From Orbicella franksi (taxonomy: Eukaryota): a stretch of DNA of 64,000 nt. The notes under the pieces were generated by a model that saw nothing but the letters and a program-made list of their open reading frames with translations, made no database searches and was not told where the DNA came from. Numbering within the stretch: position 1 is the stretch's first letter; each line of letters begins with the position of its first letter. Positions 1 to 31,251 of the stretch are shown one piece after another. The position numbers and the translations under genes are program-made. Location of the stretch: positions 10,416,001 through 10,480,000 of the forward strand of contig OZ116698.1 of assembly GCA_964199315.1 (NCBI GenBank). The letters run 5' to 3'.

Positions 1-202
1 ATGCAGACATTCAAGTTACACTGGGAAAACTCGAAAGTTCTTGAGTAGAACGTTGACCGAAGCTTGGTCTCTATGGATTCTGCGAGTTAACCTCTTTCAA
101 ACGCCATTTCATGTTTATTGTAAGCTATTTAGGTACTCATTTGAGTTTTCTAATTCTTAAATGGGTGTGTAACAGTGCCATGTTGCTCTAATGCCATTCC
201 AG

Positions 203-9374: not shown

Positions 9375-12061
9375 CACGGAAACTTGCGGGACAAGAGTGG
9401 AAAAAAAAAAGAACGAATGCAACTGCCTGGTGCAGAGAGGTTATTGATCATTACGTTATGTACGCCTTGCGTGCCTACAAAGTTAATTTTAAGCGTTTCA
9501 CTTTATAGTTGAAGGAAAAGTTTGCTTGTTTGTTGGAATTAATTCAAGATAAATACAAGGCGATTCTAAAGCTGGGCTAAAAAGATCAGAGTATTAAAAT
9601 TCACTTGTCAAAAAAGAACAGAAAACAACGAAAGTTATAACATGTGAAATGTAAGTAAGAGTAAGTTATTATTAATATTTCAAGCACTCACTATAAAAGA
9701 ACACAGTTCCATTTAGCATATTGCTATTAGTTACCCTGAATAGAGTAAGAAAATGCTGCATTTATAGGCTAAATGCCAAAAATGTTGAGATATTTATCTC
9801 CCAAGATGGAAATGTAAATGTTAATATGAAAATATCTTGTTAAGAGAAGAGTTATTGACTGGGAGGCTTCTCCCTGATCTATATTGTATATTGATTATAT
9901 ATGATAATCGTGTATAGACCATTTCCAGGTTGTAAACGTAGTTCTTAGTTCTAGAACCTTTACCAAAGAAATGATTTGTATAGATCAATGAAAACTGAAC
10001 TCGATTTGAGCAACTTGTACCTGTTGTGAAATCTTTTTTCACAGAAGTTGTGATTTTACATGGAGCGGTTTGTAACAGTTTTCAGTACCGCTTCGGCAAT
10101 GCAGAGTTTTCCGGTTAGCTTAGGGCGCAATGTAATTTTTTTTAAAACCAATCAGAGCACGATATTCTAACCTTTTTACGGCAAGTGCGATTGCAGAGAA
10201 CTTCTCATTACACTGTTCTGTTACTAAGCTTACTAGAAAAATGACTTGTAATCTTCATACAGGTGTCATCAATTTTCACCCTTCAAGGTGTAAGTTTTAT
10301 AGCAGGATTCTTGAGCTTAGAGCTTTCAAGCCTCAGGAAGAGAATTTTGTTCGTACTGTGGATGAGACCCCAAAACGCGTTTGTTAAACCACGGTTTGCA
10401 TACTGTAATCGATTGATACTGAGCCAAAGCTATCCTTGCATAACGACCTAAGAATGTAATGAAGCTTTAATAATACGCGATTGATATACACGTTTTTCCT
10501 TGCCGTTGCTGAGCATGCGTGTTTCCGCAAGTTTCGTTTTGCGTTTGTCGCTAAGTGATTGGTTAAAAAAAATCGTTCAAAGTGCCTACCCAATCAGAAT
10601 AAACGTGTCTCAGGTGACTGGTCCACGTCACTTTTCCCGCGCTTTTCACGAACTGTATCTTTTCACTACCGTTTGATTCGATTCCCGTCTTTACACTAGC
10701 TGTCTGTCGCTGTTGATTTAAATTCAAGAACTTTGAAAACTGCTTGAGCAACCGCTGGGACTATTTTTGTTATTGTTCAATTGTAATTGCAGCCATTGTT
10801 CTATCGTACAATATCTCCTTAACCAATTTTGTAATTATGACAAGTAATTTAATTTAAATGCAAATTCGAATGATTAACTTTGTGAGACAACTAAACAAGG
10901 TTTAAAGTATAGTGAAAATTGATTAAGAAGCTTATTTAGCTGACTCGAGAAAGAATTAAAATTGCAATGTTGGTGACTTTGTTTGTGTCATTACAGCGAG
11001 TGGTGTTCAATCAATTCTGGGTCAAACTGAAACCAGCCTCTCGGTGAACACGAACGAAGTCGATGATTTTCCGAAATGTCTCCGTTATCTTCGGCGTTGA
11101 CAAGCGATAACCAGAATTACGTCCGCGTTCGGAGGCAGGCTAGAGATTCTTCGGATTCACCCACAAAAACCAATCACCGCAAATCTTCGAATTCAGAGGG
11201 TACCCCGAGTAATCCAGAAAGTTTCACGCCAACATGACGCCAAAAGATACGCTGTCAGTCATGATGCGTAGAAAAAGTCCCCTCGGTTTGCACATATCTC
11301 AAACACGAGTCTGACCAAAGATTTGGGTTCGCTCCTGTCGTGTAAGAGGGTTTATCATTTGATGTTAGTACAAAACCAGACAGTCCAACCGCTAATCGTG
11401 CTGCTTCACACTAGAAAACGTGCAGCACGTAAGAGACCTACTTTTTACCTGGTGTTCTCACCTCATTTTTTTCTAGCGCGGTAGACAATAATTTAATTGG
11501 GAGTTCTGTAGTCTTGTATAAATCTCCCCCAACCTTAACTATCCATCATCCCATAAAAGTTTTGACCCTAATCCGAGCTTGTTTGTATAGCCGTTCTTTG
11601 GAGTCCTTTTCTGGGGCTTAGAGGACCAGGACGAAGAAAAATATAGGGGAAAAGACTTCCCAAGGAAGTGCCATTGACCAACCATCAACGCAGTGAGAAA
11701 ATCACTAAAAACAGTTACATAATCACAAGCAGAGAGTTTACCTCGTTTATCTTTGTCTTAAATTATTTATTAACAAACAACTTCAGTATATATTAGAACT
11801 TCATCAATGGAATAGCAGTATGTTTGAAAATACAAAAAAAAAAAATTTGAACGTTACAAAGTGCGTTCTTCTTAAGTCGATATCTTAAGTTACACGAATG
11901 AGGATTGTACAAGTCTGAGCAACATGTACAAATTTTTAAAAACGTTTGTCAATATTTCTGCGTTATCAACTGGAACAATGTTGAACGACAACAAAAACTA
12001 TTGTAACTCCAACTTTGGACTTCAAATGCGAAACAATGATCTGAAAGACAAACAGAGAACG

Positions 12062-12807: not shown

Positions 12808-13654
12808 TTAAAATTTTTCTGAACTTTTACGGTTCCCTTGACATCTATCGCAAACATGCGCCCCAGAATATTTTTTAAGACAACTTTTTGCCAGACATGC
12901 GCGAAATCTAATTCTTGGGTAGGGCAAATCCATGGCAATGTCTATGTTAGTCAGTGGCAAGTACCATGGTAGCATATCCATGTATAAGCAACGCAAGGGT
13001 TTAAACTACAGCAGCAATTTTATTTGAAGGGAGCTAATTCACTAGAGTGGAAATCAATTTGCGGGCACCTTTCATATACATGGTCTTATCAGAGAAAAAT
13101 AATCATATAGGTAGTTCCACCTTACCCCTCCTGCTACGCCCCCCCCCCCCCCCCCCGAACCACTAGTAGAAACTACCAAGGGGAGTATGGAAAGATAGAG
13201 AGAAAACTGTGGGAAAGTCCAAATAAAGTCACGACTTCAAACGCTTACAAAATGAGGCTTTACAGTAAAAATACCTGATAACAAGTTCTTACCTTGCTTA
13301 GGAAAGGACTTTTACTCCGACTGTGCCTTCCCGACTGTAATTTTTCTGTTTAAACAGGAAACGCATAACATGTATGATTACCGACCAAAATTGAAAGAAG
13401 ATCACCAAACCTACACCATCAATTTAAAGATCACCAAACAAGAACACTACCTACCACCAACACTCGCAGTTTTTTGTTTTTCTTTATAAGTTTAGAAATG
13501 CGAGTCTTCTCCTGAAAAACAAAACAAAAAAATGGATGCACATCACGGAACACTTCAGGCTACTCCGCAGTGAAGTTACAAAAACAACAGGACATAACAT
13601 TCGCATATTACACAGGCGAACATGTACAATAGAAGACTACCAAGCAAGACTATC

Positions 13655-13687
<33 letters not shown>

Positions 13688-16600
13688 CTTAATTCACACT
13701 ATTCAGGTACAAAAGAAAGGTAAGACAAAAAGAGAAACTATAGAAAACGTAATGATAGAGATTATATAACTATATGTTCAATTTGAGTCGGTGTGCAACA
13801 GCCGAAGTAGCAAAGCTTTCGAGTTGGTTGCGGCTTATTTACAAATAAAGAAAGGAACGAACGAAGGAAACAAATAATCCATCAAACCGAAGCCTGGTGC
13901 CCAACCATTCGTATGAAAATGAGTTTAATTTGCATGTGAATCAAATCTCATTTATCCGTTTAAAAATGAAGTGCGGGAACACTGATGGCATTGACGGTTC
14001 GTATGAGGTGGTGAGTATGGAAAAACTCTTCTTATCATGGTCTGGGGATGATGCAAAACACTGTGATTATCGCGTACCTTTCTGTTGGTCGGGTTCTCAT
14101 AGCATAGAGAACATTCAAAAGCCTGTGGTGAAACAAAAGAAAAATCGTGTTAAAGAACAAATTCTCCTTATTTGCCTCCATGTACAAGACAAGCCACAGG
14201 TGTAGTTTTACACTTGAGCTTCACAGCTACCAATCTGACTAGCCTCTGATGCATCTATGTGAACTTTGTTCTGGCACCCTTCCATAATAAAATAAATAAC
14301 ATGGTCAAGAGACAGCAACCTTCCATAATGGAAGGGTGCACCGTTTCATAATAAAATAATTAAGATGATCAAGTGACAAGGGGCTATTCACCCTAAATTA
14401 GTTATACTAAGCCCGGCTTGGTTGATCTAACAGTTACAAACATTAAATGCTTGATCAAATGCGTGAGCAATTCGCAAGAAAAGCTGTTGTAATTTTCACT
14501 GACCTGGGCTGGAGGAGAGGCATAAAACTCGTCATCAAGAACTCTGAGATCCTTTTGGTGAACCTCCCATGATTCACCCAGATCCAGCAGTCTGATATAA
14601 ATCTAAAAAATCAGCAAAGTGTTTAGTTAGATAAGCTGTTTTGACACTAGAATTACCATACTGTGGTCTGGATCTAAATACTTTCAATGATATAAGTGTG
14701 TTAAAAGCCAGAAATAAAGTGAAGATCTTAATCCTTTACGGACAGTGCTTTTCTTGTCTTCCGGGTTGGTGCAGACGCGGTTCCCGAGGTTCCTTACCCC
14801 GTCTGTTACTTTACGGGAAGTAAAACTAAGCCAAGGAAACATGTTCCATTAAGACGCACAACATGAGATGACGACGTCATATCACGATGGAATGACGTCA
14901 TGATTCCCGAACAGCCGCCATCTTGGATCCGCCATATTGGATTTCTTTACTTTCCCAGGCCGTCAAAAGTAAACAAAATGAGTCAACCCTTACGCCGTCG
15001 AATCGAGACAAAAGCCTTCAGCTACGAGACATAATTTAACAACCTACTTACCTTCCCTTGATCGAGGGTTTTCTCCACCAGTGCTCTGTACCAGTAATCG
15101 TCCAGTCCCTTCACAGCGCACTGCTTGTAAAGGTGGATTTCGCCAGGATCAAGAGGTCTATTTTTGGCTTTAATGTGAGCCCTAATGAAGACATAATTAC
15201 TGAGCCCACACTGGAGAACAACTTCAAATGATGATAGTATCTTTCATATCTGCACTTTATTACTTAACTAATGATGAAATTCAAATGTTTTGTTCAAGGA
15301 GAAGTCTACGAATTTACAGTAAGTCGTAAATGGACATCTGTTAACACAACAAAAGACTACTTTAAAAGTATAAGCTTTGACAGATGTGAATAACTGGTTC
15401 AATCGTACTTCATTTTCAAGAGTCATTTCTTTAATTCCTTCAACAGTTCACTTGAATCTGGGATCTTCAAACCAGCAAGTAATTATTCTGTAAAACGAAT
15501 GATGTCAAAAGCTGTTTCCTTTCCTCAAACCAACAGCCTACAAAGCTCCTCAGCTGTGATAGCATAAGGCCGCTTTGATATGCGTTGGGGGTTACAAAAC
15601 TCATTGTGGTCTCCCCAGGACCAATAACTGGCCTTTTGATAGCCTGTGAACAATTACTGCCGGCTCTTAGAGTCAGGATTGGAGTAGTCTGGCCTTTCCT
15701 TTTTAGTGAACTTTCGTCCTCAGGCAATAACAGACTGGTACACGAATGTAGTGGTTTGGCAAATACAGTACATGTAATTGTAGAACAGCACTAACCCCAT
15801 CCGCTCCATGTCATCCACAAAGCAAGCTTCCTCCTTACTGGTTCTCACAACACGAGCCCAGAAAGTCCCGCTGCTGGACATGCTCTCTGTGGCCACAATC
15901 CAATGCTCCTTGCCTGTAAATTAAAAAAAAAAAAAAGAAAAATAGAATATTTAGAAAAGGAAGCCACAACAGACTTAGCTGGTTTTCATGCAGGCCCTTT
16001 ATCCTGGTCGAATTGAAATTTGGAGTGTTCGTTTATACGGAGGGAGGAAATTCGGAACCCGGGCAACATTGGTGAGAGGCAAGCGCTCTCACCACTGCAC
16101 CATCCCTGCTCCCCAAATGAGCATGACGTGATTAAAAGGTAAATGAAATAAATTTTGCCATGTTCCTTAAAAGACTGTTACACTCTGATATCCTTGCCAA
16201 TATTTACATTCCTGTGAAAAATGACAACAGTGAAGAAAATAATTATTAAAAACCCAACAGGCTTGATGCAAATATTAAATGATTCCATGTATGGCCTTGT
16301 TATAATCTGACATTGAGGGCATCTGCAAGCCCTGTGGGGAGTTTAAAGATTCACATTTCAGCGGACCAGGGCTGTCTGCTGCTTAATGGTTCCCTGTAAG
16401 ATCTTGTTATAATCCGACATTGAATGTGTGTAGGGCTTGTGGGGATTGTCAGGGACCAACGACAGAAATGAGGAATCGCCAAAACAAAACCACAGGGCTG
16501 ATATGCGGAGCCGAGGGCAGCCATAACAGCAGCTTGAAACAAGTGCACCAGCACCAAGAATGCCCCCACCCTGTTTAGTTTTTCTATGAACCATCCTGAA

Positions 16601-19600
16601 TGCTGCTGTTGTTGTAGTTGTAGTTAACTTAATAGAGCAGTGTTCAATTGCGTGTCAAAAAAAAACTCAGGAAATTACTTTGTTATACCTCCCAACACAA
16701 ATACATTTTCCGACTGGAGAACATGCCACGTGTCGGGGGTCAAAACTCACTAACTCCCTAGAGCAAACAAAACTCACTAACCCCCTAGGGAAACAACAAC
16801 TTGAACTTTCGACTCGCACGTGATCAGGTCATGCTCCTTGAAACCGCGGCAAATTTGTGAGCCAGCCGGCGTCAAACAAACGATTTCTTCGCGGTTTTTT
16901 TTTCTTTCTATTTTTGAGTTGGGCGGTATAACAAAACACTTAATGACTGGTCCCGCGAGAAACAGTGAGTTTTGTTTCCCCTCGACCTCAATGTTCCCCT
17001 CGGCTTCCCCTTGGAGAACATTGAGGGTCTCGGGGAAACAAAACTCACTGCTTCCCTTGGGGCCAGTCATTAAGTGCTTGTTGGTTTTGACTTTAGTTTT
17101 ACTACCTTTTGAGATTGGGTGAGTAGTCTAGTTGGTACATAATAGATCATAGTCATATTTTCGGTATTAGACTGGAACTAGCTTTTAACTGAGGCTAATG
17201 CAGGGAGTCTTTTCAAAGAGGTTTTATACCTTTCCAATGATATTCCCCCCCATGAACCTCCACTGCAAGCTAGTTCCAGCCCAACACCAAAAATATGAAC
17301 ATGGTCTATTGGTTTGGTTTTAGTTTAATAACACTCTAAATGATGCAATCCTGACCTATTTCTACCGGCAAATCTTCGCAGTCTGAGAGCAACTCCTCTG
17401 AGCTTCCACGGGAAAGGACTTCTTGTGAACACAAGTCGTTCAAAACAGGGTTATGTTTGTCTTGTACCTCACCATTTACATGACCTTCTGATACAGATGA
17501 ACCCCCTGAGGAGACAGTTTAAGGATCAAATAGAACCCATCGTACAAACCACCTGCAGGTCAATTGGTTAGTATTTAAACAATCTTATGACTGTCAGCTG
17601 CCATTTATATTTCACCTGAGTCACAATGTGGCCAGTCTTTCTAATCCAGATTATACAAACAATAATAAAAAAAAAAACAGCAGTGGATGAAAGCAGTTGG
17701 GAATGAGTAGACAGTGAATCATTTATTACAAAAAGAAGTACTATACTCTTCATTGGCTGTAATCTCAAGGCAAAGAGCAATAAAATCTGGCAGGGGGGTG
17801 GGGAGGTTCATTTAAGGCCAGGCACTGGGCAAATTGACCAGCTAAGAGGATGACTTTGCCGGCTGGTTTGACTATCCAGAGGAAGATGTTCTGCCAGCCT
17901 GTGAAAAACCAGTTGCCCTCCCGCTGAACACATTATTTAATGAAATCGCTGACAACATTTGTTGAAAGAATATGGAAACACATCAAGACAATTTCCCTAC
18001 CTGCCACAATGTTGTTGTCATCACATACTACATCAATGAGAGATGGATCAGCAGAGGACCAAGAATATGCCTCATCCTCAACTCCTGAAAAGCTGTATGA
18101 ACTAGGCACAGTATGAATTGACTCAAGAGCTGGGTCATGATAACCATCCTGTTTGAGTTCTGAAAAACAAACCAACACGCTTTACAGGGCTGTCAATAAG
18201 GGCCGTAACCCATAGCACCTGTTACAGCTGAGCATGCTTGATGGGCCCTTGATATTTCAGGTTAACTTGCCTGTAGTTGATACAATTCACCCATGCCGTA
18301 ACAAGTTTGTTACAGCTGTGAAGATCAAGGCTACAAATGAATCAAAACTTAGTGACAGCCCTGTTTTAAATGGCAAACATTTGTGGAAAAAACTTCCCAC
18401 TGAAGTGACAGACCAACCCAGTGTTAAGGGGTTTGGGACCAATTTTGCCACTTTTTTACCCCAATAGTGATCTAGTTACATTTATTCTCTAGTTTGTTTT
18501 CCTTTACTTCTGCAGTAATGGGTTAATCCCTTTGCAGATTACTGATGAAGATGTAGATGGATGTCTGCAGTTATTATTATGTGAAACAGCTAAAACTTGA
18601 ACAGTACTAACAGAAACTGTCATTGTCACACCTACCGAACTGCCACATGAAAGGCAAAGGATGGTGCACTCAAGTGAAGCAATAAATCAACTGACACTTG
18701 TTTGCTGTTGACAATTGCTGCTGTTGGTACTAGTGGAACAAACTGTCTCACAGGCAGTTCTGATACAGTAGAAAAGCTAAAACTTCCATACATTTTAAAT
18801 ACTGGAGACTCCCCAACACATACAGTAGCCTTAGCCTTTTATCCTAAGATTCTCATTAAAATTCTCCATAACAAGGGTAGACTGTCTCATTCAGTTACAC
18901 ATACAAATACTAGTTGACACATTTTGGAAACATGTCAAGACAAATTCCCTACCTGTGTCACTGGCCACAATATTGCTGTCATCACACTTTGTCTACCGCA
19001 AATGGGTCAAGTGCGGGAAATCCACCCTTGATCCATCCCTAGTAGACAAAGTGTGAGATAAATACTACACACACTGTCTACCTCGGATGAATCTAACCCT
19101 AATTCACAATTACAGTGCATGAGTAGACAGTGAATGCATTTATTTAAAAATACAATGTTTATACTATACTCTTGATTGGCTGTATTCTTAGGGCAAAGAG
19201 CAATGGTATTAGTTGAGGGAATATGGAAACACGTCAAGACAATTTCCCTACCTGTGTTACTGGCCCCAATGCTGCTGTCATCATCCACTTCATCAACCCC
19301 TAGGGATGGATTAACTTCAGACTCCCCCCAAGGATCAAGTTCATCTTCATTAGCCTCAACTCCTGAAGAGTTGCATGCACGAGGCACAGTATGAAGTGAC
19401 TCATCAGCTGAGTCAAGATAACCATCCTGATTTTGTTCTAAAAAACCAAACAATACTTTTTAAATGGCAAAAAAATGTCTAAGTCCACCATCAATTATTG
19501 TTATGTGAAAGAGCTGAAACTTAAACAGCACTGACAGAAGCTGTCATCAGGCTTTTCATTTGAAAAGTGGCCATCCAAAATGTACTATAGGGCCTACTAA

Positions 19601-22600
19601 AATGAGCAATTTATAAGACAACATATGAAAAATAAAACAATTTTCTTTAGAAAGTGGCCATCCACAGGATGCCTGGACACTCATCTGGCTAAAAGCCTGG
19701 CTGTCATTCATCAAACCCACTGAACAGTCACATAATAAACTATCCTCAGTACTAAAAGCTTTCTGACATATCAGGGCTGTGTTCTACAAATGCCCAGGTG
19801 CCATGGACAACTAATATTTGTCTTTGGGTGACTTGAAAAACCTACTTTTTTACATAAGCTTACACACGTATGTGCTGGCCACCCAGGATTTCATGGTTAG
19901 GAACCTTTGGGATCCTCATAATTTTTCATAGACCACAGCCTCACTAAATTTTGGACTATTCTTGTTCTTCTCCTACACAGAGACAATACTTTTGCACCGG
20001 GGCAAATCTGATTCTGAGCTTGTTTAAAGTATATTTACAAAGATCAGAACCGGGTTGGGCTGTGTGCTCAGATGTAAAAGAAAAAACAAACTAGAAGCAC
20101 CAGTTTCAAAGTCAATCTCACCAGTAGGTTCAATCTTGTGATCTTCGTTAACATCTTCCTGTCTTTCCTTGGGGGGTGAGCCTTCAGCTTCCATTTCTTG
20201 AGAGCTTGGTAGACTAGCCTCTACAAGGCTTTGACCTTCCATTGAGCCAACAGAAAAAAGGCCTACATCTTCATCTGGACCTTTTATCTGCTCATCATAG
20301 CCTCCTTGCAGCTCTGGAATAGCACATGTTCCTTCTTGGTCATGTGTGTCATCAGAATTAGTAATGACTTCTTCGCCATCACTTGCTGTCACACTGTCGC
20401 CATCACTGGACACAATTTCTTTGTTCTTAATAGAGAGAACTGGACCACAGCTAGTAGCAGCTGATGTGTCAGCTTGCAAGCTTGCTTCCTCTGGAGATGA
20501 ATCTGTAACAACTTCAGACACAACAGAGAAATCTGTTTCCACAGTTTCAGGTGGAATGTCTTTTGGTGCCTCTTGTGCACTGCTTTCATCCACCTGGTCA
20601 ACCTCAGAACACTTGGCAGCTTTCAAGTTGTCCTCAATCTACAAAAACCAAATGCAAATTGCAAACTTGACCGCGTGGCTACAAAATCAAAAGAAGTATC
20701 ACACAGGCTTAAGAAGTGGTAGCCTGCGAGAGCATCCAGTTTTTTTTTTGGCTTGTTTCATGGACCAAGGAAAAACCATCTGCGAAACCAAGCCACAGAT
20801 TGGTTTACGTGACAAAATGATAATGTCGAACTACATACACGTACGTGTAAGTTTAAAAGGTTTAAATAAAAAATGAAACATTCAACCTACACGTATAAAG
20901 ATGTTACAAATTGTACAGTGTCATTACCAATCCAGTTCCATCTGAGCTTGTTGTACCATACTGCATATACAAGGTATATGGTAACCTTCAATTATATATA
21001 ACCAGGGCAAGTTATAAGTACAAATATGTACTTGCCTCTTGGTCCCAGTCTTCCTGTGATGCTGGCAAACCATTGCTGGTTTCTTCAGGAGTATTCCACA
21101 AGGGTCCAGCATGAGTATTATTCAAGGGCTCAGCATCATAGCTTTTCCTGTCTCTGTTCTCTTGATCAGCAAGGTAGAACTGGTGATCCTTCATCGCTTG
21201 TTGTAAAATGGACTCAAAATTACCACTTGAGTCAAATGCACGAACAATCATCTGTCCAAGCCTGTTATTAATTTCATAACCATCGGCAGCTTCCTCAAGA
21301 TACCTCCTTGAGAAACCACAATTAGGTGTGATCACATCGGCAAAATAAACATTGCTTGCGTAGATCCACTTTATATCGCATCTTCCAGTCATCTTGCTAC
21401 CAAATTTAAATGGATCATTGAGCTTTGGGCAGCTCTTTGTAGAGTCAACAGCTGATACCATTTCAGCCATCCCACAAAACATAGAAGTTCTTATTCCTGA
21501 GAACAAGAGGAAAACAGGACTCTGGTCTCTGCGTGCTGCTTCACCAAAGACACGATTTAACTTTTGGTTGGCATAGGCTGTGGAACACCAAATGTTGAAC
21601 TTCATGCCCTCCACAATCCTCCTGATATCAGACCTGATCATCAAAAATCGTGCTCTGGGTAAGTCCTCCTGGCAAATCAAATTGAAGGAACATTTGGTCA
21701 GGATGTGGTTATAAGTTGTAAAGTCAACACATCCAGCCGGCAAATGAGTATCTGTCACTGCATTGTTAAAGCCGTCAAATGCATTTACAGGCATCACAGT
21801 GACTGCTTCATCCTGTACTGGCAGGTGTAGAATACCAGGAACACTATTTTGCTCCAGAGCAGAGTGAAGAGGAACCTTCTTCGACAGTCCTTCACGTTCA
21901 GGAGAAACCGGAACAAACTCTGCTGCTTCAGCACGAAGTACAGGCTTATCACCACCCACATTATCATGCTCCTCAACAGGGACATCTATTTTATGAACAT
22001 CAGCAGCAACTTGATCAGTAACACCAGTCTCAGTGTTTGTCTTTGCCAATGTCTCCTCTTCTTCAGATGTACTGCTATTAGCATCCATCTTTGGGACAGT
22101 GTCTTGTACAATGTTGCCTGGTGTCACTGTTTCTGAAGTATGTTGTTTGACAGTGTTGTCTCCACCAACAACTTCCACAGTTTGTACCTTTTCTGCTTTT
22201 GGCTGAAGAGGACGATCCTGAAGAAAAAAATCATTAACACGTATTGTTTAGATCACGATTAACTGTTTAACCTTTAATTAACAAACATTCTTTCCCATCG
22301 GGAAAAAGCAATGATTTGCATCCAAATAAACAGGAAGGACAAACTCTCACCCCTAATCCATGTTTTTGGTCTTCCACTGAAATGTTGACAAAAAGAGTTG
22401 AGTTACATGACTTGTATGGTCATAAAAATTATTATAATAAGTTAATCATAATATTCACCATGACCAGAACAAGAGACAGAGTGGAGGATGGGCAATGGTC
22501 TCATCTGTAAACAAGCCTCTAAGACAGTGTATAAATTTAAACATAAGTGATAGTGGTCAATTGTGTGCCCAGTAACCTACAGCTGTAGTATCCCAACCAA

Positions 22601-25600
22601 GTTGATGTAAAATATATAAATTATAAGCTGAGAACTGGCATTATGTGTCTAATTTGAGCTGGTACATGTAGTTTCAACAGGCCCTTTGAACAACCTGCTC
22701 ACTTGGTACAGGCTCAGCCATGCTAGGATGCAAGTGGCACAGTGGGATTTCCAAAACAACTTAGAAAGTCAAGCATTGCTTTGTTTTGGATATCCCACTG
22801 CATGACATGTGGCTCAGCATGGCAGATTTGTACAATGTGATGTGGTCATGCAAGGGACCTATGTGTCATAATTATACTCCTCTCCAGCTGCAATGTAAAA
22901 TACAAAAAAAGTTGAAAAGCAAAATAGCAAAACCCAAAGTTTAAGAAGAGCTGCTGTGACCCACCTAATTTTGCAACTTTGCTGTTGATACAAACTGGAA
23001 TCTCGCCACATGAACCCAGCATCACATGATAAAGCTCACGGCCTTTCTTATCAGTGACCTATTGAGTGGCAGAAAATAAAAACTAAAACCCAGCAAAAGA
23101 ATATGTACATTGATATTAATTATCAGACGACATTGATAAGATACCCAATGGTAACAGATCCAATAAAATTGAAACTCACATCCATTATATGACTGCCTTA
23201 ATTTGATAATCTAAGCACAGGTACAAATTGCACCGTCAGGTACATTGGATACACATACTGTTACCAACGCTAAGTTTGAGATTTCTGTTCATCTTAAAGG
23301 GTATTTTGGGGGGATATTAGATCTTGCCTTCACTGTACATCTCAGTCATGTATCTCACATGTATCTGTTAGACCCGACCCAATCTCCGGTAGAGCACTGT
23401 TGTTATTACCTGGCCTTCCACTGAAGCCATCAGAATCTTGTTGAAAGTAAAGTCTTTAAAGCACCACTTGGCCTGAAAAGCATAAGAATCAAATTATTAA
23501 CTATGTAGGAAAACATGAAGGCCTTTCATGTAGAGCCACACACACTCGTAAGAGAATATAATTGGATGGAAAACTACCAAAAAATTACATCTTAAGTGTG
23601 GTGGAAAGCAAATTATATTAGTAGTCTCTGTCATACACATAAATATTTTCTCTTCTATCAAAGTTGTATTCAAATTATTGCAACCACTTCTGTAACTTTG
23701 AATTCAATCACTTTTTATGTTTCAAACTTTCCTTGCATTAACAAAAATATGATTTATTAATACACCCTTGTACATTGTATCAGTCTGTCCCCATCCAACC
23801 AGAGTTCAAACAACAGCATACATGTTCTTTCAAGTGAACGATGACAAGAAAGATTTGCATTACCTCATAAGGAAGTTGTGTTTCTGGATCAGGAAGTAAA
23901 CAACACTCCAATGCCTACAAGAACAAAAAACACTCTTGGTGATCATTTTCACCTTAATTTTGGCATGATACAATGTACTGCTGCATGTAAGATGCTATAA
24001 ATTACTACACAGTCATACTAATGACTATACATTTGTTACTATTAAACATCTTGTTCTCTGTTTATACAACCCTCAGACTATTGAATTTCACAACAAAATA
24101 TACATTAAAATAAGTAATGTAAAAAAGGAACAATAAAATAAAAACTCACAAAATGCAGGAAGTGCCTAACAAAAATTACCACTTTGTAGAGTCTGCTTAG
24201 AAAGTATGTGTTGCAAAAAATGTCAGTTTATTTAATAGAATGGTGCCCAACAAACACCATTGATAATGATACAACCCTTGACTATACAACTATACCTGAA
24301 ATGAAATATCAACCACATCTAATGGTAGTTGACAAAGGCTTGAAGGTGAGAACTCGTCAACAATTCCCAAGTCAAGGAAACGGAGCCTTGCCTAGAAACA
24401 CAGTATTGTAAAAAAAAAGGATAATGTAACATTCAGAGAAATAGTTTACCATGAAACATCACAATTTTAAAGCATCTACAAGTAAATCAGTAATATCAAT
24501 TTAGCATTGTAATAGTCAGTGTATGCATGTAACAAGCACCACCTGGGTACCAGAGGTTTTTACTTTCTCATATTGCAGGATACCTTGGATCAGCCAAAGG
24601 TTGACATGGTTGCCAACAGAGTGCATCTTGGGATACAAGCGATTGGAGTTTTTGGCATATAATGGCGTGCACAGTGCCAGTGCTGATATATAAACGCTTA
24701 ACTACATAAGGTGACTTGGTGTCACATCTATGACTTCTTAACTTTGCCCCCATTTTATCCCATATTGAATACTGTATCCTGGCTGATAGCGGGTATCTTA
24801 TGGGATCCGTTTGAGTCCAAAGTTTCCCAGTGAACATAATACTAACTTAGAAAATTGGGATTATTTGAGCAGAGCAACAGGGGACTTTGCCTGCTTGCCT
24901 GGCTTTTGTTACCCTTGGTGCCAGAGGTTTTTTGTTTTTCGTGGTGAAGCTGCAAACAGTGAGCTGTGATACTGCAATTTTTGCAGTGGAATTTAAAAAG
25001 CCTTGGTGTGTCTTTGGCGTGGAAGTCTTGTGGAATGCACCCTAGGTTACCAGTGACACAGCTGCAAGGAAAAACCTCTATGCTGGAGTGCATAAACTTC
25101 CAGTTGATGTCTGTGATTGAAAATATGTCTGTGCTTGAGCACTCTATTAAAGACTTGACTGAAATCAGAAACTATGCATGAAAGGCATCTGGCACCCAGA
25201 ATGGACAAGGACAGTCAAGCGCTGCACAATCAAAACTTTATATGTATGTGCTTCACAGTGCCTTACTAACTGTACGACCATCCTAGCACTGAAAATCAAC
25301 TGGAGTAATCAGTATGCAGCATTCCCAATGTGTAAAGCATGTGCATCCCTACAAACCCCTTCATACAAATATAAGTTAGTACACAAAGATGGATTATTGT
25401 GGTAGGTGTAATTTGCTAATTAAAAAAAGATTTCTGCAAGTTTACCAGATATAACAACCAAGGGGTTTAGTAAAGAAATACACCACCAATAATTTGTGTG
25501 TAAAAAATGTGTGTGTAGAAAATCTTTACTTACCATGCCAGAGGTCGTAACAAGCTCAATCCTGGTTCGGCAGAATTCTTTGACTTGTCTATGGCGGACT

Positions 25601-28600
25601 GCACAAAGTGTTCCCTCTTTTAGAACAACAGGGTCACCAAACCCATGCTGAAGGTAGTATTTTCTACAAAACAATTCAGTACGAAAATAAAAAACAACTA
25701 GTACTGTAAATTGTACATGACAGAAACAATTATTAATAATAAATAATTGCTAATGTTTCAAACCTCCAAGGGGAAGGAAAATTGGTTTGAAAAATTGGGT
25801 AGTTTGAGAAAAAAATCAGGGTTAAAATTACATTGTTCGACTATAAGAGGAGGGAAACAACTCTTGGTTCAAGTTATCAGGAGGTTTGAAAAATCCAGGG
25901 TCCAAGCAATTGGGATTCTACTGTATACAGAATAAGATACAAACAAGGCGCCTAATAAGAACCGCACTTGATAGCAACTTGAATTTGCCTCTGTTTTTCC
26001 ATTTCTGGTTCTCCTATCTTTGCAATCCAGAAGGATCCATTTCTGGCCAGTGATCCAACCACACAGACAGGAAATACATCTTTACCTAAAATGCAACAAA
26101 ATTGTCTATCATTGCCAGGCTAGTGATCCATGTGAGCAATTCATGAAATGACAGCAGTATATAAAATGTACAGCCAAAGGAGAACTGCACCTTTCAGCTC
26201 ATCGGGGAGATTAACACGGGGTTCTTCTGGGGGACCTTTTTGGTCTTCAGCTATAGGCTCTTGTGAAGGTTTTACACAAGGCTGATCAGACGAATCCACA
26301 ACAGGACCACTCAGTGGTTCCTGGTTGGTACTTGTAGTTTCAATGGGAACAGCAAAAGGATCTTTTTTAGCTTCGCTTTCACCATCTCCAGCAGGAGAAC
26401 TACATTGTGTAAGCATGGATGATACCTACATGAACGCAAAGATAAACTTAGGATGCATTGCATGACATTTGCTGCATTCTACAGTATAAATTATACTTAT
26501 TTTATGATCATTTCATAGTCTTCGTAAAAGGATCTTGTCACACCTACATGTACATGACTGTAATGTACACTTAAAGTTTACTACCTCGACCATGTTATCA
26601 TGATTTCCCAAAACAAAATGTATAATCTAACCACAAGGTGTTTAGAATTAATTTTCCTGGTAACCAAAATAGTCCAGGCTGTTAGAAAATGTTATCAACC
26701 ACTCAGTACCTTAACCGTGTGAGTGAAAAATCTGTAGACACTGATTTGATTCTGACAGGTCAAATTGTGTACTGACCAATCACAATAAAGTTCAGGACAT
26801 GTATGTGAGCAAACCTCAAAACCACAAACCAAATTACTGATGTTACATGTATTTGCAGTTTAGTTTCCTTGTGCATAATATTGGCTTTTCCCTTGCCACA
26901 CAACACAATGACATTCCATAAATATTTCTGGGGTTCACGGTTTACAGAGTTTCACAGTAACTTCAGACAATAACATTTATGTTGTACCTCGACTTTGACT
27001 ATCCTAAATATTTCAAAAACCTCATCCAACAATAATTGTCACTTTCAACTGTCACATTACCTGGCAAGGATACAGGATTTTAGAGAAGGGGGTCCGAGAT
27101 ACAGACTGCCAAAGGTGATCCCCTGTAGGGAGGTCCATGGGGTATCATCCCTCAGACAATTTCCAAAATTGAGGTCCTCAGAAATGGGATTTCCAGCATT
27201 GATAATAAAATTATCTCATTTTTTTTTAACTTAGGGTTTTTGACGAAATCCCCCGAACCCCCTACATGTAGATACACCCCAGCATTACCAAGCAATTTAA
27301 TGGCAAAAAAAAACAATTGTAGTGTTGAGCTGATTTCTAATTCTATGTAGCAAACTTAACTAGACAAACAGCCATGTACATTGAACCTGTTAACAGTACC
27401 TTTGCCAAGTAGTTGAAAGCTTTCTCGATTTTTGTTTCACAGTCTTTAATTTCAGCAATTCTCTTTTTTGCTGCATTTTGAAGATGGATCAACTGACTAA
27501 GAGTCTCCTGAGAGTACAAAAGAATACCAAACAATGCATTTACTAGTTCGGCCATGATAGATATTCACATACAGCAACAATTTTGAAAACCTTATTCACC
27601 AGAAATGTTAAAACTTTTGAGGAAAAAAACAGTTAATTTAACTGTACTAAATAAATGATGTACAAAGATGTGCACAATTTAATTCACAGGACAGATTTAA
27701 AACAGTACAATGTATCCAGATCAAGCAGCCTGGGTTCCAGCCCTAGCTGGGGACATCGTCTTGTGTTCTTGGGCAAGACACTTTACTCTCACAGTACCTC
27801 TCTCCACCCAGGTGTATAAATGGGTACCAGCAAACTTAATGCTGGGGAAGACCCTGCGATGGACTAGCATCCCATCCAGGGCGGAGTGGAAATACTCCTA
27901 GTCGCTTCATGCTACAGAAACCAGGATAAGCTCCAGCCTGTTGGGCCACTTGGCTTGTATGCAGACTTTAAAAATAATGTAAATTTCTCAAAGAGCTCAG
28001 AAAATTTCAACTCTGTTTTGCCAAATCTAATCATTGGATTTGGTTGGTGGACTTCTATAGAAAATGAAACTCATTTAGAAAGGCAGTACATGTATTCACA
28101 ATTAAGAAATGTTATTAAAGTAAATGGGTGAAATTATTAATTAATTAATTAAAAAAAGAGCTGATTGTGGGCCGCCTTTGACTTGTAGTTTACATCACCC
28201 AAAATCCATACCTTTTCTTCTGTTTCTGTATATTTTAACTTTGTCAGGACATTTTTAAGCAGATCATTTTCTACTTCTATTAACCTAAGAAAGAAAAAGT
28301 TTTAAATTTTCTGATCAGAACAGCTACTGTAGTTCAAGTACATGCAAACTCTGTCACTGAGAGAGTCTAGTAATGAATAAAGTTACGATGACGTCGACAT
28401 TCCATCTTCTACAGTACATTCTAGAAGCTTTTAACTTACTTTTCAATGTCGCTGACATCTTGAGACAGCCTGCGTTCTTTTGCCTATTAAACAATCAAGT
28501 TAGAACAAGAAATAGTTAATACCTGTAGTAGACCTTTACAAACATCGTATAGTGCCTGTACAACTACATGTACTTGTACCACTCATGAAGCAAAGAACTT

Positions 28601-30952
28601 AACAAGGTTGAAAGGAGGTAAATTGTACATGTAGAAATAGAAAAAAGCATACCATAAATCCTCCACATGTATTTAGAAATGCTAGTAAAGTGCCAGATTA
28701 CCCCTGACTTTTTGCACCATACATGTACTCAATAAATGAGGAGTTATATATTTTGCAGTTAATTACCATTCTTATTGAACATTCATGTATGAACTGTTAA
28801 TAATTTTTCCAAAGATCACAAGTACTGTGCATGGATGTGCTTATTTTTTGGTTATAAAGGAGAAGAAAGTTAAGTGCTTTATAAAGAGGAGAATTGAAAA
28901 TTTCTGGTTGTAAAAGGGTTTCTTTGACATGGCACTTCACAGAGGATTCACAGTTACTGTAGTTAATTAAGGCATTTTGATTTTCTATGGCATTACAAAA
29001 CACTACATGTACACCCTTCCTACATTGCACCATAGCCCAATTCCGAGAGCCCTAAGCTTCTCTGTCAAAGTGAGGCCTGGTGCACAACCATTCATACGAA
29101 AATGAGTTTAATCTGCATGTGAATGAAATCTCATTTTCATAAGAAAGGACGGGCAACAAGACTCACTTTGACAAGGAGGCTAAAGGTAATTAGCATTTAT
29201 ATATTAATTACATTTTAATGAAAAACTAAATTAAACATTTTACCTTCAGTTCCAATGGCTCAACTTTGTGAGCCCTGAAGACATCAAGGCTGTGTACTTG
29301 GATGTTACATTGCGCGCACAGATTTATAATACTCTCTGCAAAATTCAATCATCACTGCAGTAAGGACACTCAAACTGTAAACACATGACATTTTTTTGTA
29401 CATTTTTTTGGTTATATAATATACAAGAAAAGCATTTTATAAAACAAAAAGGAATCTTGTTAATTTGAAGAGCCCTCATTCTGCAGTCACTAAATAACTG
29501 CACAAAAAATCTCAAGAGTTCACAGTTTAAATGTCTTCACTGTAACACTATTAATAATATACATGTATATCTATAACAACAGCATTTAGCCAAAAGAGTA
29601 AATTCCTGAGCAATACATGATTGGTTTGCTCCCAAACACGAGATTCCACAAAAAAGGAATTATGGCAAATGCTAAATTTGAGACTTTGCCAGATGGCCAG
29701 TCTAATTAAGAGATAGAAAACATTTACCATGTTTATATCAAGTTTTAGTATACATCTACTAACGTTCTATCACGAATGCTGTTCTCTGATTGGCTACGCT
29801 ACTCACTATCTTTTCTGTGATGGATAGTGAGTAGCGTAGCAGTGTGCCCTTGTTAACAAAATGACGGCCGCTTCTTGGCGTTTACGAAGTATCTGTGAAG
29901 AGGATTTAGATTAAGTTTTGAACGACTGGTAGATTTATACTAAAACAATAATATTAGATTATTCGCTCTCGATTTCTATCAACCGATAGTTGACCCGGGA
30001 GAATGAGAGATGTTATGGGAACACAAGCTAACCGGCGAGTGTTTCCATAGCTTTTTTAAATTCTCCCAAACTTCCACAAGTGTTTCTATAACTCAACAAA
30101 ACCACGGAGAATATGTTTTCTATTTCTTTTAGAAAATTCTGTGACGAAAAAAAGAAATCAACTTGGTTAATCGATCATCAAAATGTAATTTCTCTTTTAT
30201 CATGCCATCATTACGTGAACAGCTCGTGCTGGCTCTTGTTTCAGTCGAGTTATAGAGATATGATTTTAAACCAATCAGCGTACATATTTTCTAATATATT
30301 TTACTGAAGAGATTTTTTAAGATATCTTCTGTCACATTTCAACTGTGACAAAACCAATCACATGGTACAACTACACATCGTGGATCTTTCTCACCGTTTC
30401 TGGGAAACGAATGGTGTTTCATTAGGGTTTACCATCTTGTGCACGGGTTGGTGACTTGTTTCAGAGAAAAGCATTAAAAATAGTCCCAGTATCTTGCAAA
30501 CAAAATGTAAAATCTTTTTTCACGGTACCTCTGCCGCAATCCCAAGCTCGTGAAAAATAAACATGACACTTTGTCGCTTTTTTCTCAATTCTTGGAAACA
30601 CACGGTATCCAAGAAAACTACAATGGCAGTTTCTTGGTAAAACTTACCAAACAAATCACAATTTTCATTCTAAATTTCAACAGATTTGCAGCGCACAGCA
30701 ATTATTTTTTCTCTCGTCACGTGCAACCAGTACAATATTTTGCCTGGGCATACTTCGGTACACTTTAACATGGCAAATGAAATATTTATTGAAAGCAAAT
30801 GGTTGGAATAAAAAGACTTGCGGGAATAAAATTACTATGTACAGACAAATGAAAAAAAATAATAACTTACCATATTTACAATCAAAACATTTGAAATCTG
30901 CACGCTTTTCCGGATGATTGTAGCAAATAGGCGACATGGCCACGGCGGCCAT
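12808..30952 (-). CDS. B-box / coiled-coil / Tudor / YTH / Tudor protein (RNF17/Qin-like Tudor scaffold carrying a YTH domain), about 1376 aa
   Basis: Phase-consistent exons (high-low): 30952-30871, 29335-29244, 28483-28440, 28284-28212, 27507-27400, 26425-26191, 26085-25968, 25663-25534, 24391-24296, 23914-23864, 23472-23410, 23058-22965, 22376-22351, 22217-21036, 20638-20101, 19437-19252, 18159-18001, 17505-17356, 15913-15796, 15181-15052, 14602-14504, 14122-14078, 13511-13451, 13345-13293, 13005-12808. Total 4131 nt, one open frame. B-box CYNHPEKRADFKCFDC...LCAQCNIQVH...AH. Tudor1 GTLCAVR..EFCRTRI..RFLDLG..FQALECCL. YTH IWCST..PVFLLFS..FCGMAEM..DIKWI. Tudor2 FWAR..CAVKGLDDYWYRALV..RLLDLGE..PAQAFECSL. 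The 26-nt exon and the last three exons are less certain. Confidence 0.85.
13654..13686. repeat. (CAA)n microsatellite
   Basis: About 11 tandem CAA units read directly. Confidence 0.95.
13891..13953 (+). repeat. Fragment of an interspersed repeat also present at about 29074-29137
   Basis: GCCTGGTGC(C/A)CAACCATTC(G/A)TA(T/C)GAAAATGAGTTTAAT(T/C)TGCATGTGAAT occurs at both sites. Confidence 0.8.
16937..17076. repeat. 140-bp imperfect palindrome at one end of an interspersed repeat (about 16770-17076)
   Basis: Arms CACTTAATGACTGG..CAGTGAGTTTTGTTTCCCC..CCTCAATGTT / AACATTGAGG..GGGGAAACAAAACTCACTG..CCAGTCATTAAGTG. Apex CGGCTTCCCC. Confidence 0.85.
17141..17310. mobile_element. MITE with about 45-bp imperfect TIRs; decayed relative at about 6370-6500
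   Basis: AATAGATCATAGTCATATTTTCGGTATTAGACTGGAACTAGCT ... AGCTAGTTCCAGCCCAACACCAAAAATATGAACATGGTCTATT. Confidence 0.75.
21230..21662 (-). other. YTH domain (YTHDF-like, divergent) within the Tudor gene
   Basis: ARFLMIRSDIRRIVEGMKFNIWCSTAYANQKLNRVF..PVFLLFSGIRTSMFCGMAEMVSAVD..GRCDIKWIYASNV aligns by eye with the YTHDF pattern ([54 protein letters not shown]). Confidence 0.9.
24568..24837 (-). mobile_element. Possible decayed Tc1/mariner transposase fragment (HTH region) in an intron
   Basis: VVKRLYISTGTVHAIICQKL resembles the mariner helix-turn-helix (IS.GTVH.II..KL). No DDD motif or TIR was seen. Confidence 0.3.
27058..27200 (-). repeat. Interspersed repeat fragment; inverted relative at about 61820-61960
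   Basis: GGATACAGGATTT..AGAAGGGG..CGAGATAC.GAC....CAAAGG.GATCCCCTGTA..AATTGAGGTC..CAGAAATGG matches the reverse complement of 61826-61958. Confidence 0.65.
27714..27970 (+). mobile_element. tRNA-derived SINE, 5'-truncated copy
   Basis: Colinear with the 60421-60726 and 56907-57201 copies (GGCAAGACACTT.ACTCTCACAGT.CCTCTCTCCACCCAG.TGTATAAATGGGTACC ... ATGCAGACTTTA). Confidence 0.85.
29755..30310. repeat. Composite of interspersed-repeat fragments
   Basis: Short hairpin GCTACGCTACTCACTATC..GATAGTGAGTAGCGTAGC. AAACAATAATATTAGATTATTCGCTCTCGATTTCTAT is shared with the 41325 palindrome family. Confidence 0.55.
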
Positions 30953-31251
30953 GGCCGCGTCGTTCCTCCGAGAAACGACCTCTTTAGGTGGGTTTGTTTA
31001 GCTTTCTAAACCGAAAAGAAAAAAAATCACAACTGTTTTCACGTTTTTTCAGCTGAAAATACAGACAAGAACCAACACAGTTTCCATCCGCTTTCATTAA
31101 CACTGTGATCACTTTTGTAATTAACGATTGTTTTGTCACTGGTTACGCATGCTTCGAAGTCTCGCGCGTTTTTCCTCCGAAGATGACGTAGATAAGAAAT
31201 ATTAGATCGTCGGCTTATCTTCGTAAGAGTTCCTCATCCATCCGACGATGC

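What the first reader, a model, noticed from the sequence alone, without database searches (positions are those of the whole stretch)
12808..30952. Tudor-YTH fusion: a germ-granule-type scaffold (B-box, coiled coil, two extended Tudor domains) with an embedded YTH domain
Seen: 25 exons splice in phase into one frame of about 1376 aa: B-box, coiled coil, Tudor1, YTH, long acidic region, Tudor2, Cys/His tail. Known: B-box/coiled-coil/Tudor proteins (RNF17/TDRD4, Drosophila Qin/Kumo) act in piRNA ping-pong and nuage; YTH domains are m6A readers normally found in YTHDF/YTHDC proteins, which have no Tudor or B-box domains. I do not recall a described Tudor+YTH protein. Inference: a lineage-specific adaptor that could couple RNA or m6A recognition to PIWI/germ-granule machinery.
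Basis: partly seen in the sequence, partly recalled or inferred. Interest (0 to 1): 0.88.

Follow-up and report, generated by a model that had tools for sequence, protein, structure and literature searches.

The report
Coral Tudor-YTH fusion gene, already described
This is a real, transcribed coral gene that fuses a zinc-finger/coiled-coil/Tudor scaffold with a YTH RNA-binding domain, but the architecture was already reported for corals in 2020, and its supposed methyl-reading pockets are mostly altered.

Summary
The core observation holds. The minus strand carries one gene with 24 coding exons (ATG 30952, stop 13300-13298, 1300 aa) plus a 3'UTR exon. It encodes B-box, coiled coil, extended Tudor 1, YTH, an acidic disordered region and extended Tudor 2.

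RNA-seq joints link the Tudor1 exons to the YTH exon and on to the acidic exon. A 4149-nt intronless transcript from a related coral matches every exon. Orthologues exist in Oculina, Desmophyllum, Stylophora and Montipora.

The novelty claim fails. Bell, Wolf and Koonin (BMC Biol 2020, PMC7641849) described coral multi-eTudor-YTH proteins with an N-terminal B-box. No functional study was found.

New here:
- The YTH domain is YTHDF-type but keeps only one of the three cage tryptophans (W, then L and M, plus a conserved PFxF insertion).
- Both Tudor domains lack the canonical dimethyl-arginine cage.
- A conserved PAM2-like motif (LRAEAAEFVP) lies upstream of the YTH domain.
- The YTH exon is one symmetric phase 0-0 exon.
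- The folded domains are under purifying selection (dN/dS 0.09-0.23).

A simple "m6A-to-PIWI coupler" is therefore doubtful. A coral-specific RNP scaffold with re-specified pockets fits better.

The parts
30871..31117 (-). Exon 1: 5'UTR (at least to 31117) plus ATG at 30952; first half of the B-box (aa 1-28)
   Evidence: L001 transcript nt 1-251 aligns to 31117-30859. There is an in-frame stop upstream of the ATG. Donor GTAAGT.
29244..29335 (-). Exon 2: second half of the B-box (aa 28-58). Ligands C10 H13 C22 C25 C34 C37 H42 H50.
   Evidence: All eight ligands are invariant in the orthologues. Pfam zf-B_box is sub-threshold in the orthologues.
27400..28483 (-). Exons 3-5 (28483-28440, 28284-28212, 27507-27400): coiled-coil helix, aa 59-133
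   Evidence: P0198-guided splice sites. The RNA loose end at 26427 reads into the exon ending at 27400. The AF2 helix 44-141 has pLDDT 70-88. dN/dS 0.09.
26191..26425 (-). Exon 6: variable linker, aa 134-212
   Evidence: RNA joint 26191|26085 with 9 reads plus contigs. dN/dS 0.96.
22965..26085 (-). Exons 7-12 (26085-25968, 25663-25534, 24391-24296, 23914-23864, 23472-23410, 23058-22965): extended Tudor 1, aa 212-396
   Evidence: Every junction is seen in X23 reads and in X1/X14 contigs. PDB matches to Papi, Tudor eTud11 and TDRD1. Cage positions are H275, C282, F299, L302, I304.
22351..22376 (-). Exon 13: 26-nt micro-exon (aa 396-404, VEDQKHGLG)
   Evidence: RNA joints 22965|22376 and 22351|22217. 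It restores the frame. Conserved in orthologues.
21036..22217 (-). Exon 14: 1182 nt, phase 0-0, GC-AG donor. Holds a disordered N-part with a PAM2-like motif, then the whole YTH domain (aa 405-798).
   Evidence: Joint 21036|20638 with 12 reads plus contigs. The same single exon is seen as an ORF in other corals.
21909..21938 (-). PAM2-like motif LRAEAAEFVP (aa 498-507)
   Evidence: Invariant L, A, E, F and P in five orthologues, inside a variable region. Matches 5 of 6 specified positions of the consensus LNxxAxEFxP (PMC7356810). Pfam PAM2 gives only E 0.064 in the Stylophora orthologue.
21231..21653 (-). YTH domain, YTHDF-type fold. Pocket residues W614, L670, PFKF 673-676, M680.
   Evidence: Pfam E 7e-18. 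PDB sequence match to YTHDF2, E 3e-13. Foldseek matches to YTHDF1/2/3. Pocket alignment.
17356..20638 (-). Exons 15-18 (20638-20122, 19437-19252, 18159-18001, 17505-17356): acidic disordered region, aa 799-1136. Exons 16 and 17 are a tandem duplicate.
   Evidence: L001 alignment. Direct repeats with a spacing of about 1278 nt. dN/dS 0.51.
13293..15913 (-). Exons 19-24 (15913-15796, 15181-15052, 14602-14504, 14122-14078, 13511-13455, 13345-13293): extended Tudor 2, aa 1136-1300. Stop TAA at 13300-13298.
   Evidence: L001 and five orthologues end here. PDB matches to TDRKH (E 2e-7), TDRD1 and SND1. Cage positions are K1199/G1200, Y1206, L1223, L1226, E1228.
11745..12040 (-). Exon 25: non-coding 3'UTR exon. 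AATAAA at 11771-11766; the end near 11745 is inferred.
   Evidence: L001 3'UTR nt 4060-4148 aligns to 12042-11954 at 97.8%. Acceptor ...tttcag|atcatt is read. The donor GTAAGA lies 5 nt after the stop codon.

Best explanation
The locus is one gene of the scleractinian 'eTudor-YTH' family already described by Bell, Wolf and Koonin (2020).

It encodes a 1300-aa protein with these parts, in order:
- an RING-less B-box and a long coiled coil, a likely dimerisation or oligomerisation module as in TRIM and RNF17/Qin-type proteins;
- an extended Tudor domain;
- a disordered segment with a conserved PAM2-like peptide;
- a YTHDF-type YTH domain;
- a long acidic disordered region;
- a second extended Tudor domain.

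Shown here: one mRNA, the domain folds, conservation across robust and complex corals, and purifying selection on every folded domain.

Inferred: it acts as a multivalent ribonucleoprotein scaffold.
- The YTH domain binds RNA through a pocket that has been re-specified (W614 kept; L670 and M680 replace two tryptophans; PFxF inserted). Classical m6A reading is therefore uncertain.
- The PAM2-like peptide may tether poly(A)-binding protein.
- The two Tudor domains lack the aromatic cage and Asn, so they probably make methylation-independent protein contacts.

The YTH domain sits in one symmetric phase 0-0 exon inside a gene of otherwise small exons. This fits acquisition by exon insertion into a B-box/Tudor gene in an ancestor of stony corals.
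For: - One gene: RNA joints link exons 5 to 15. An intronless 4149-nt transcript of a relative carries TUDOR-YTH-TUDOR and matches all 24 coding exons and the UTRs.
- End-to-end collinear orthologues in Oculina, Desmophyllum, Stylophora and Montipora.
- Family already published.
- Domains.
- Pocket changes are conserved in about 25 distinct coral sequences, while more than 90% of the 142 nearest non-coral YTH proteins keep the three tryptophans.
- None of those 142 proteins has a Tudor domain.
- dN/dS: B-box/coiled coil 0.09, eTudor1 0.20, YTH 0.23, eTudor2 0.19, against 0.5-0.96 in the linkers.
- PAM2-like motif invariance.
- Exon phases.
Against: - The mechanism is inferred from sequence only. 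No binding, localisation or cell-type data exist.
- PAM2 is below Pfam threshold and has Arg in place of the consensus Asn.
- The pocket residue mapping rests on sequence alignment across a 4-5-residue insertion, so a Phe of PFxF could rebuild an aromatic cage.
- The window's own 3' half (exons 16-25) is supported by a relative's transcript and by splice logic, not by reads of this species.
- Absence outside Scleractinia rests on database searches with word and cluster limits.
Confidence: 0.8

Rival explanations
1. One reading: a dual reader that couples m6A-marked RNA (through YTH) to sDMA-modified PIWI proteins (through eTudors) in germ granules or nuage, as an RNF17/Qin-like piRNA factor.
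For: - B-box plus eTudor proteins (RNF17, Qin) are the nearest feature-space neighbours, with scores of 0.71-0.84. These are leads only.
- Bell et al. place the family in the piRNA-origin context.
- The YTH fold is YTHDF-like.
- Some eTudors bind PIWI without methylation (established knowledge, e.g. TDRKH, Krimper).
Against: - W486 and W491 equivalents are L and M, and R527 is A.
- The Tudor1 cage is H/C/F/L/I and the Tudor2 cage is K-G/Y/L/L/E, against the canonical F/Y/F/F/N.
- No RING, and only two Tudors.
- The gene is present in ordinary adult-colony metatranscriptomes, so it is not shown to be germline-restricted.
Confidence: 0.15
2. Gene-model artefact: two or more neighbouring genes (a Tudor gene and a YTH gene) merged by eye or by read-through.
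For: The YTH exon is unusually large, and its read depth is higher than that of the small Tudor1 exons.
Against: - Spliced reads and contigs join Tudor1 exons, micro-exon, YTH exon and acidic exon.
- One ORF of 1298 aa lies on an intronless transcript contig of a relative.
- The architecture is conserved in at least five other corals.
- No transcript start or end pile-ups were seen (table 6).
Confidence: 0.02
3. The YTH domain is a degenerate, non-nucleic-acid-binding or sequence-specific (Mmi1-like) module, kept for structural or protein-binding reasons. The protein is functionally a Tudor scaffold only.
For: - Loss of two cage tryptophans and of the R527 equivalent.
- Pfam score of only 65 bits, against 140-300 for canonical YTH proteins.
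Against: - dN/dS of 0.23.
- The replacement residues (L, PFxF, M) are invariant across deep coral lineages, which argues for a maintained ligand pocket.
- W432 and the basic K416 equivalent are retained.
Confidence: 0.15
4. Exon 14 is a cassette exon. Because it is phase 0-0, skipping it would give a YTH-less B-box/Tudor isoform that may be the main product in some tissues.
For: - The exon phase is symmetric.
- RefSeq lists isoforms for the Montipora orthologue.
- Coverage differs strongly between the two polyA runs X21 and X23.
Against: No 22351|20638 joint was reported in four runs. All assembled contigs include the exon.
Confidence: 0.1

Closest known systems
Coral multi-eTudor-YTH proteins (Bell, Wolf, Koonin, BMC Biol 2020;18:159, Figs 11c and 13)
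   Same: N-terminal B-box zinc finger, extended Tudor domains and an embedded YTH domain, found in stony corals. The window's gene is an orthologue of RefSeq/GenBank models from Stylophora, Montipora, Oculina and Desmophyllum.
   Different: Nothing architectural. That paper gave no splice or RNA evidence, no pocket analysis and no experiments.
YTHDF1/2/3 (m6A readers)
   Same: YTH fold of the DF type: best PDB sequence hits, and Foldseek TM up to 0.84. W432 and the basic K416 equivalent are kept.
   Different: - W486 becomes L, with a 4-5-residue PFxF insertion; W491 becomes M; Y418 becomes D; D422 becomes R; R527 becomes A.
- The YTH domain is internal, not C-terminal.
- There is no P/Q/N-rich N-terminal region.
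- Tudor domains and a B-box are attached.
RNF17/TDRD4 and Drosophila Qin/Kumo
   Same: B-box plus coiled-coil/helical region followed by extended Tudor domains. They are the nearest neighbours in language-model feature space (0.71-0.84, leads only).
   Different: No RING. Two rather than four or five Tudors. A YTH domain, a PAM2-like motif and a long acidic region are present. Homology beyond shared domains was not shown.
TDRKH/TDRD2 and Papi extended Tudor domains
   Same: Best solved-structure sequence matches for Tudor2 (TDRKH, E 2e-7) and Tudor1 (Papi, E 1e-3). TDRKH is known for methylation-independent PIWI binding.
   Different: No KH domains. The cage is even more degenerate: one aromatic residue is kept in each coral domain.
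Choanoflagellate eTudor-DCD proteins (same 2020 paper)
   Same: An extended Tudor domain fused to an EVE/PUA-like modified-base reader domain, with an N-terminal ubiquitin-related or zinc module.
   Different: DCD rather than YTH. A different lineage, so the fusions are probably independent.

Membership tests
Coral eTudor-YTH family (Bell et al. 2020) | YTH domain within the same polypeptide as extended Tudor domains | tested here: met
   RNA joints. Single ORF in the L001 transcript. Pfam TUDOR x2 plus YTH in the orthologues. YTH found in the window itself.
Coral eTudor-YTH family (Bell et al. 2020) | N-terminal B-box zinc finger | tested here: met
   The pattern C-x2-H-x8-C-x2-C-x8-C-x2-C-x4-H-x7-H has all eight ligands invariant. 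The Pfam zf-B_box score is 15.7-20.4 bits, below the 24.1 cut-off.
Coral eTudor-YTH family (Bell et al. 2020) | Occurs in stony corals | tested here: met
   Runs holding the DNA and RNA are labelled coral. Named orthologues are all Scleractinia.
YTHDF-type m6A reader | YTH fold | tested here: met
   Pfam E 7e-18. AF2 model plus Foldseek matches to YTHDF1/2/3, probability 1.00.
YTHDF-type m6A reader | Three-tryptophan aromatic cage (YTHDF2 W432, W486, W491; PMC9466600) | tested here: not met
   Only the W432 equivalent (W614) is kept. The W486 equivalent is L670 or N671, and the W491 equivalent is M680. More than 90% of the 142 nearest YTH proteins keep all three. An inserted Phe could compensate; this could not be tested without coordinates.
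YTHDF-type m6A reader | C-terminal YTH domain after a low-complexity P/Q/N-rich region | tested here: not met
   The YTH domain is at aa 593-745 of 1300, flanked by Tudor domains.
RNF17/TDRD4-Qin family | N-terminal RING finger | tested here: not met
   The protein starts 9 residues before the B-box. There is an in-frame stop upstream, and the 5'UTR is collinear with the genome. Pfam finds no RING in the orthologues.
RNF17/TDRD4-Qin family | Four to five extended Tudor domains | tested here: not met
   Two Tudor stretches only.
sDMA-reading extended Tudor (SND1, Tudor eTud11, TDRD1 type) | Four-residue aromatic cage plus a hydrogen-bonding Asn (SND1 F740/Y746/Y763/Y766/N768; PMC3281842) | tested here: not met
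   Tudor1 has H275/C282/F299/L302/I304 by alignment to 3NTH. Tudor2 has K1199-G1200/Y1206/L1223/L1226/E1228 by alignment to TDRKH. The same pattern is seen in the orthologues.
PAM2 (PABP MLLE-binding) motif | Consensus LNxxAxEFxP within a disordered region | tested here: inconclusive
   LRAEAAEFVP matches 5 of 6 specified positions, with N4 replaced by R. It is invariant in corals. Pfam PF07145 gives only 13.4 bits (cut-off 20) in one orthologue and no hit in the window.
TRIM (RING/B-box/coiled-coil) | RING + B-box + coiled coil tripartite motif | tested here: not met
   A B-box and a long helix are present. The RING is absent.

The most novel reading that the evidence does not exclude
The coral eTudor-YTH protein is not an m6A/sDMA double reader. 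It would be a PABP-tethered mRNP scaffold, using the PAM2-like peptide, whose YTH domain has evolved a new ligand specificity. The W-L-M pocket with the conserved PFxF insertion would define a previously unrecognised YTH specificity class, maintained for hundreds of millions of years in stony corals.
Probability: 0.25. Interest if true: 0.6.

Novelty: already known. Interest (0 to 1): 0.35.

Why it matters
The fusion is a rare natural link between an RNA-modification reader fold and the Tudor scaffolds of small-RNA and germ-granule biology. It has been used in an evolutionary argument about the origin of the piRNA pathway.

Both kinds of reader pocket are remodelled yet conserved, and a PABP-binding-like peptide is present. 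This changes what experiments should test: ligand specificity and PABP binding, rather than assumed m6A/sDMA reading.

For the scan, the point is that the architecture is not new.

Tried and rejected
- Pfam on single Tudor exon pieces gave nothing useful because the exons are too short.
- One PDB query was given in the wrong reading frame.
- The word-indexed homologue search cannot take a spliced protein and is length-limited. Full-length orthologues were reached only through cluster members of the exon-level hits.
- The profile search found no non-scleractinian relatives.
- The AF2 model of the N-terminal 402 aa, built on a five-sequence alignment, had low confidence (pLDDT 47). Only the long helix is usable, so no fold search was run on it.
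- Pfam PAM2 is below threshold.
- Rfam found nothing in 11000-32000.
- One PDB call was run without alignments and added nothing.
- Atlas feature hits are all below 0.9, so they count as leads only.
It lies in the 3'UTR intron and is absent from the relative's transcript and from the orthologous proteins.
- Read laying allowed only one 6-kb call, so exons 16-25 could not be checked with reads of this species.
Full report
**Observation**

The window is coral DNA. The runs that hold it are labelled coral metagenome or coded coral organisms.

The gene lies on the minus strand. A 1.2-kb ORF at 22247-21015 holds a Pfam YTH domain (PF04146, E 7e-18, window 21231-21653). Single small exons gave no Pfam signal on their own.

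**Finding full-length relatives**

An exhaustive phmmer search with the YTH exon found only eight close representatives (E < 1e-30). All were exon-sized ORFs of 125-527 aa. The score then drops sharply to canonical YTH proteins.

Cluster look-up showed that one cluster contains a 1313-aa GenBank protein of Desmophyllum pertusum (KAJ7334493.1). Further searches returned:
- Oculina patagonica LOC144629867 (1460 aa);
- a Stylophora pistillata protein (1572 aa);
- a Montipora capricornis protein (1293 aa);
- a 1298-aa ORF (P0198) on a 4149-nt Logan contig.

All carry Pfam TUDOR (two stretches) plus YTH, with a sub-threshold B-box. The P0198 contig (L001, SRR26904559) is intronless, with 159 nt of 5'UTR and 93 nt of 3'UTR. 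It is therefore a spliced mRNA assembly.

**Gene model**

P0198-guided splice-site choice, RNA data and frame checks give 24 coding exons. The CDS is 3903 nt and encodes 1300 aa. The ATG is at 30952 and the stop TAA at 13300-13298.

All introns are GT-AG except a GC-AG intron after the YTH exon. A 26-nt micro-exon at 22376-22351 is needed for the frame.

blastn of L001 against the window reproduces every exon at 79-99% identity. It also shows a non-coding 25th exon starting at 12040. The donor of that last intron lies 5 nt after the stop codon.

The protein aligns end to end with the five orthologues, at both termini.

**RNA evidence in this or a sister species**

PolyA reads (X23) and contigs of two other RNA runs (X1, X14) were laid on 20500-26480. 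They show these joints, written as last base of one exon | first base of the next:
- 26191|26085
- 25968|25663
- 25534|24391
- 24296|23914
- 23864|23472
- 23410|23058
- 22965|22376
- 22351|22217
- 21036|20638 (12 reads)

A loose end at 26427 reads into the exon ending at 27400. One 2102-nt X14 contig runs from exon 9 through the YTH exon and into exon 15; by its length it probably reaches the next exon.

No joint skipping the YTH exon was reported.

**Domains**

- **B-box.** C10, H13, C22, C25, C34, C37, H42 and H50 are invariant.
- **Coiled coil.** The low-confidence N-terminal AF2 model shows one long helix at 44-141 with pLDDT 70-88.
- **Tudor1 (aa about 212-396).** It matches Papi, Tudor eTud11 and TDRD1 structures by sequence.
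- **Tudor2 (aa about 1136-1300).** It matches TDRKH (E 2e-7), TDRD1 and SND1.
- **YTH.** The best PDB sequence hits are YTHDF2, YTHDF1 and YTHDF3 (E 3e-13 to 1e-9). They score well ahead of Pho92/MRB1, YTHDC2 and Mmi1. An AF2 model from a 13-sequence alignment has pLDDT 78 and pTM 0.73. It matches YTHDF1/2/3 YTH structures with probability 1.00 and TM up to 0.84.

**Reader pockets: YTH**

In the HMMER alignment to 4RDN the chain numbering offset of +385 places YTHDF2 K416, Y418, D422, W432, W486 and W491 exactly. These are the residues described in PMC9466600.

| YTHDF2 residue | Coral residue |
|---|---|
| K416 | R599 |
| Y418 | D601 |
| D422 | R604 |
| W432 | W614 (kept) |
| W486 | L670 or N671, followed by an inserted PFKF(G) |
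| W491 | M680 |
| R527 | Ala |

This pattern (W ... L-x-x-P-F-x-F ... M) is conserved in about 25 distinct coral sequences. In the 142 nearest non-coral YTH proteins the three tryptophans and the Arg are at least 90% conserved.

**Reader pockets: Tudor**

Tudor eTud11 has F2403, Y2410, F2427, F2430 and N2432. These numbers are from my own knowledge and are consistent with the spacing in the alignment. Tudor1 has H275, C282, F299, L302 and I304 at these positions.

Against TDRKH, Tudor2 keeps only Y1206. It has L1223, L1226 and E1228 at the other positions. PMC3281842 confirms the role of the SND1 cage and of N768.

Neither Tudor domain therefore looks like a canonical sDMA reader.

**Selection**

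Pairwise dN/dS was computed between the window and L001.

| Region | dN/dS |
|---|---|
| B-box and coiled coil | 0.09 |
| Tudor1 | 0.20 |
| YTH | 0.23 |
| Tudor2 | 0.19 |
| Disordered part of the YTH exon | 0.48 |
| Acidic region | 0.51 |
| Linker | 0.96 |

The altered domains are maintained, not decaying.

**Additional features**

- A peptide LRAEAAEFVP (aa 498-507) is invariant at L, A, E, F and P in all orthologues, within a variable region. It matches the PAM2 consensus LNxxAxEFxP except for the Asn (PMC7356810). Pfam support is sub-threshold. It is therefore a lead for PABP binding, not a finding.
- The YTH exon is a single phase 0-0 exon of 1182 nt, in a gene whose other exons are 26-517 nt. 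The same exon boundaries are seen in other corals. This is compatible with acquisition by exon insertion.
- Exons 16 and 17, with their flanking intron sequence, are a tandem duplication.

**Distribution**

None of the 142 nearest YTH proteins carries a Tudor domain. All named relatives are scleractinians of both the robust and the complex clades. A profile search found no others.

Absence elsewhere remains an inference, limited by the tools.

**Comparison with what is known**

[quoted passage not shown] They note that B-box zinc fingers are present in these coral eTudor-YTH proteins. They compare them with Qin/Kumo and use them in a scenario for the origin of the piRNA pathway.

A full-text search found no other paper on this fusion and no experiments.

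The architecture is therefore already known, and the window holds an orthologue. This report adds the transcript-level proof, the exact gene model, the degenerate pockets, the PAM2-like motif and the exon-phase observation.

**Verdict**

The gene and its architecture are real. The novelty claim is refuted by the literature. The functional reading as an m6A-to-PIWI coupler is weakened. Interest is moderate to low.

Noticed in passing
window 21909-21938 (-): A conserved PAM2-like peptide LRAEAAEFVP lies in the disordered part of the YTH exon. It is invariant in all coral orthologues and suggests binding to the MLLE domain of poly(A)-binding protein. Pfam support is below threshold.
   Followed up: partly
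window 13292-12041 (-): There is an intron in the 3'UTR whose donor lies only 5 nt after the stop codon. The last exon (12040 to about 11745) is non-coding.
   Followed up: partly
window 17940-19470: A unit of about 1.28 kb containing an acidic exon (exons 16 and 17) and its flanking intron is tandemly duplicated. A third partial copy lies near 18908-18984.
   Followed up: partly
window 25761-25811 (intron 7): A segment of about 50 nt shows very high RNA word depth (about 1100 in X1), with unrelated loose ends on both sides. It is most likely a fragment of a dispersed repeat that is transcribed elsewhere. There is no Rfam match.
   Followed up: partly
window 21035-21030 (-): The intron after the YTH exon uses a GC-AG donor (GCAAGT). 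The junction is supported by 12 spliced reads and two contigs.
   Followed up: yes
window 175-1023 (+) and 58290-59180 (+): The flanking ORFs look like cadherin repeats (175-1023) and a Kelch-repeat protein in a single exon (58290-59180). These are unrelated neighbouring genes, judged from the translations only.
   Followed up: no
runs X21 vs X23: Two polyA RNA-seq runs with the same species label differ about 90-fold in reads on this gene (2 against 179). This hints at stage- or tissue-dependent expression. The sample types are not visible.
   Followed up: no
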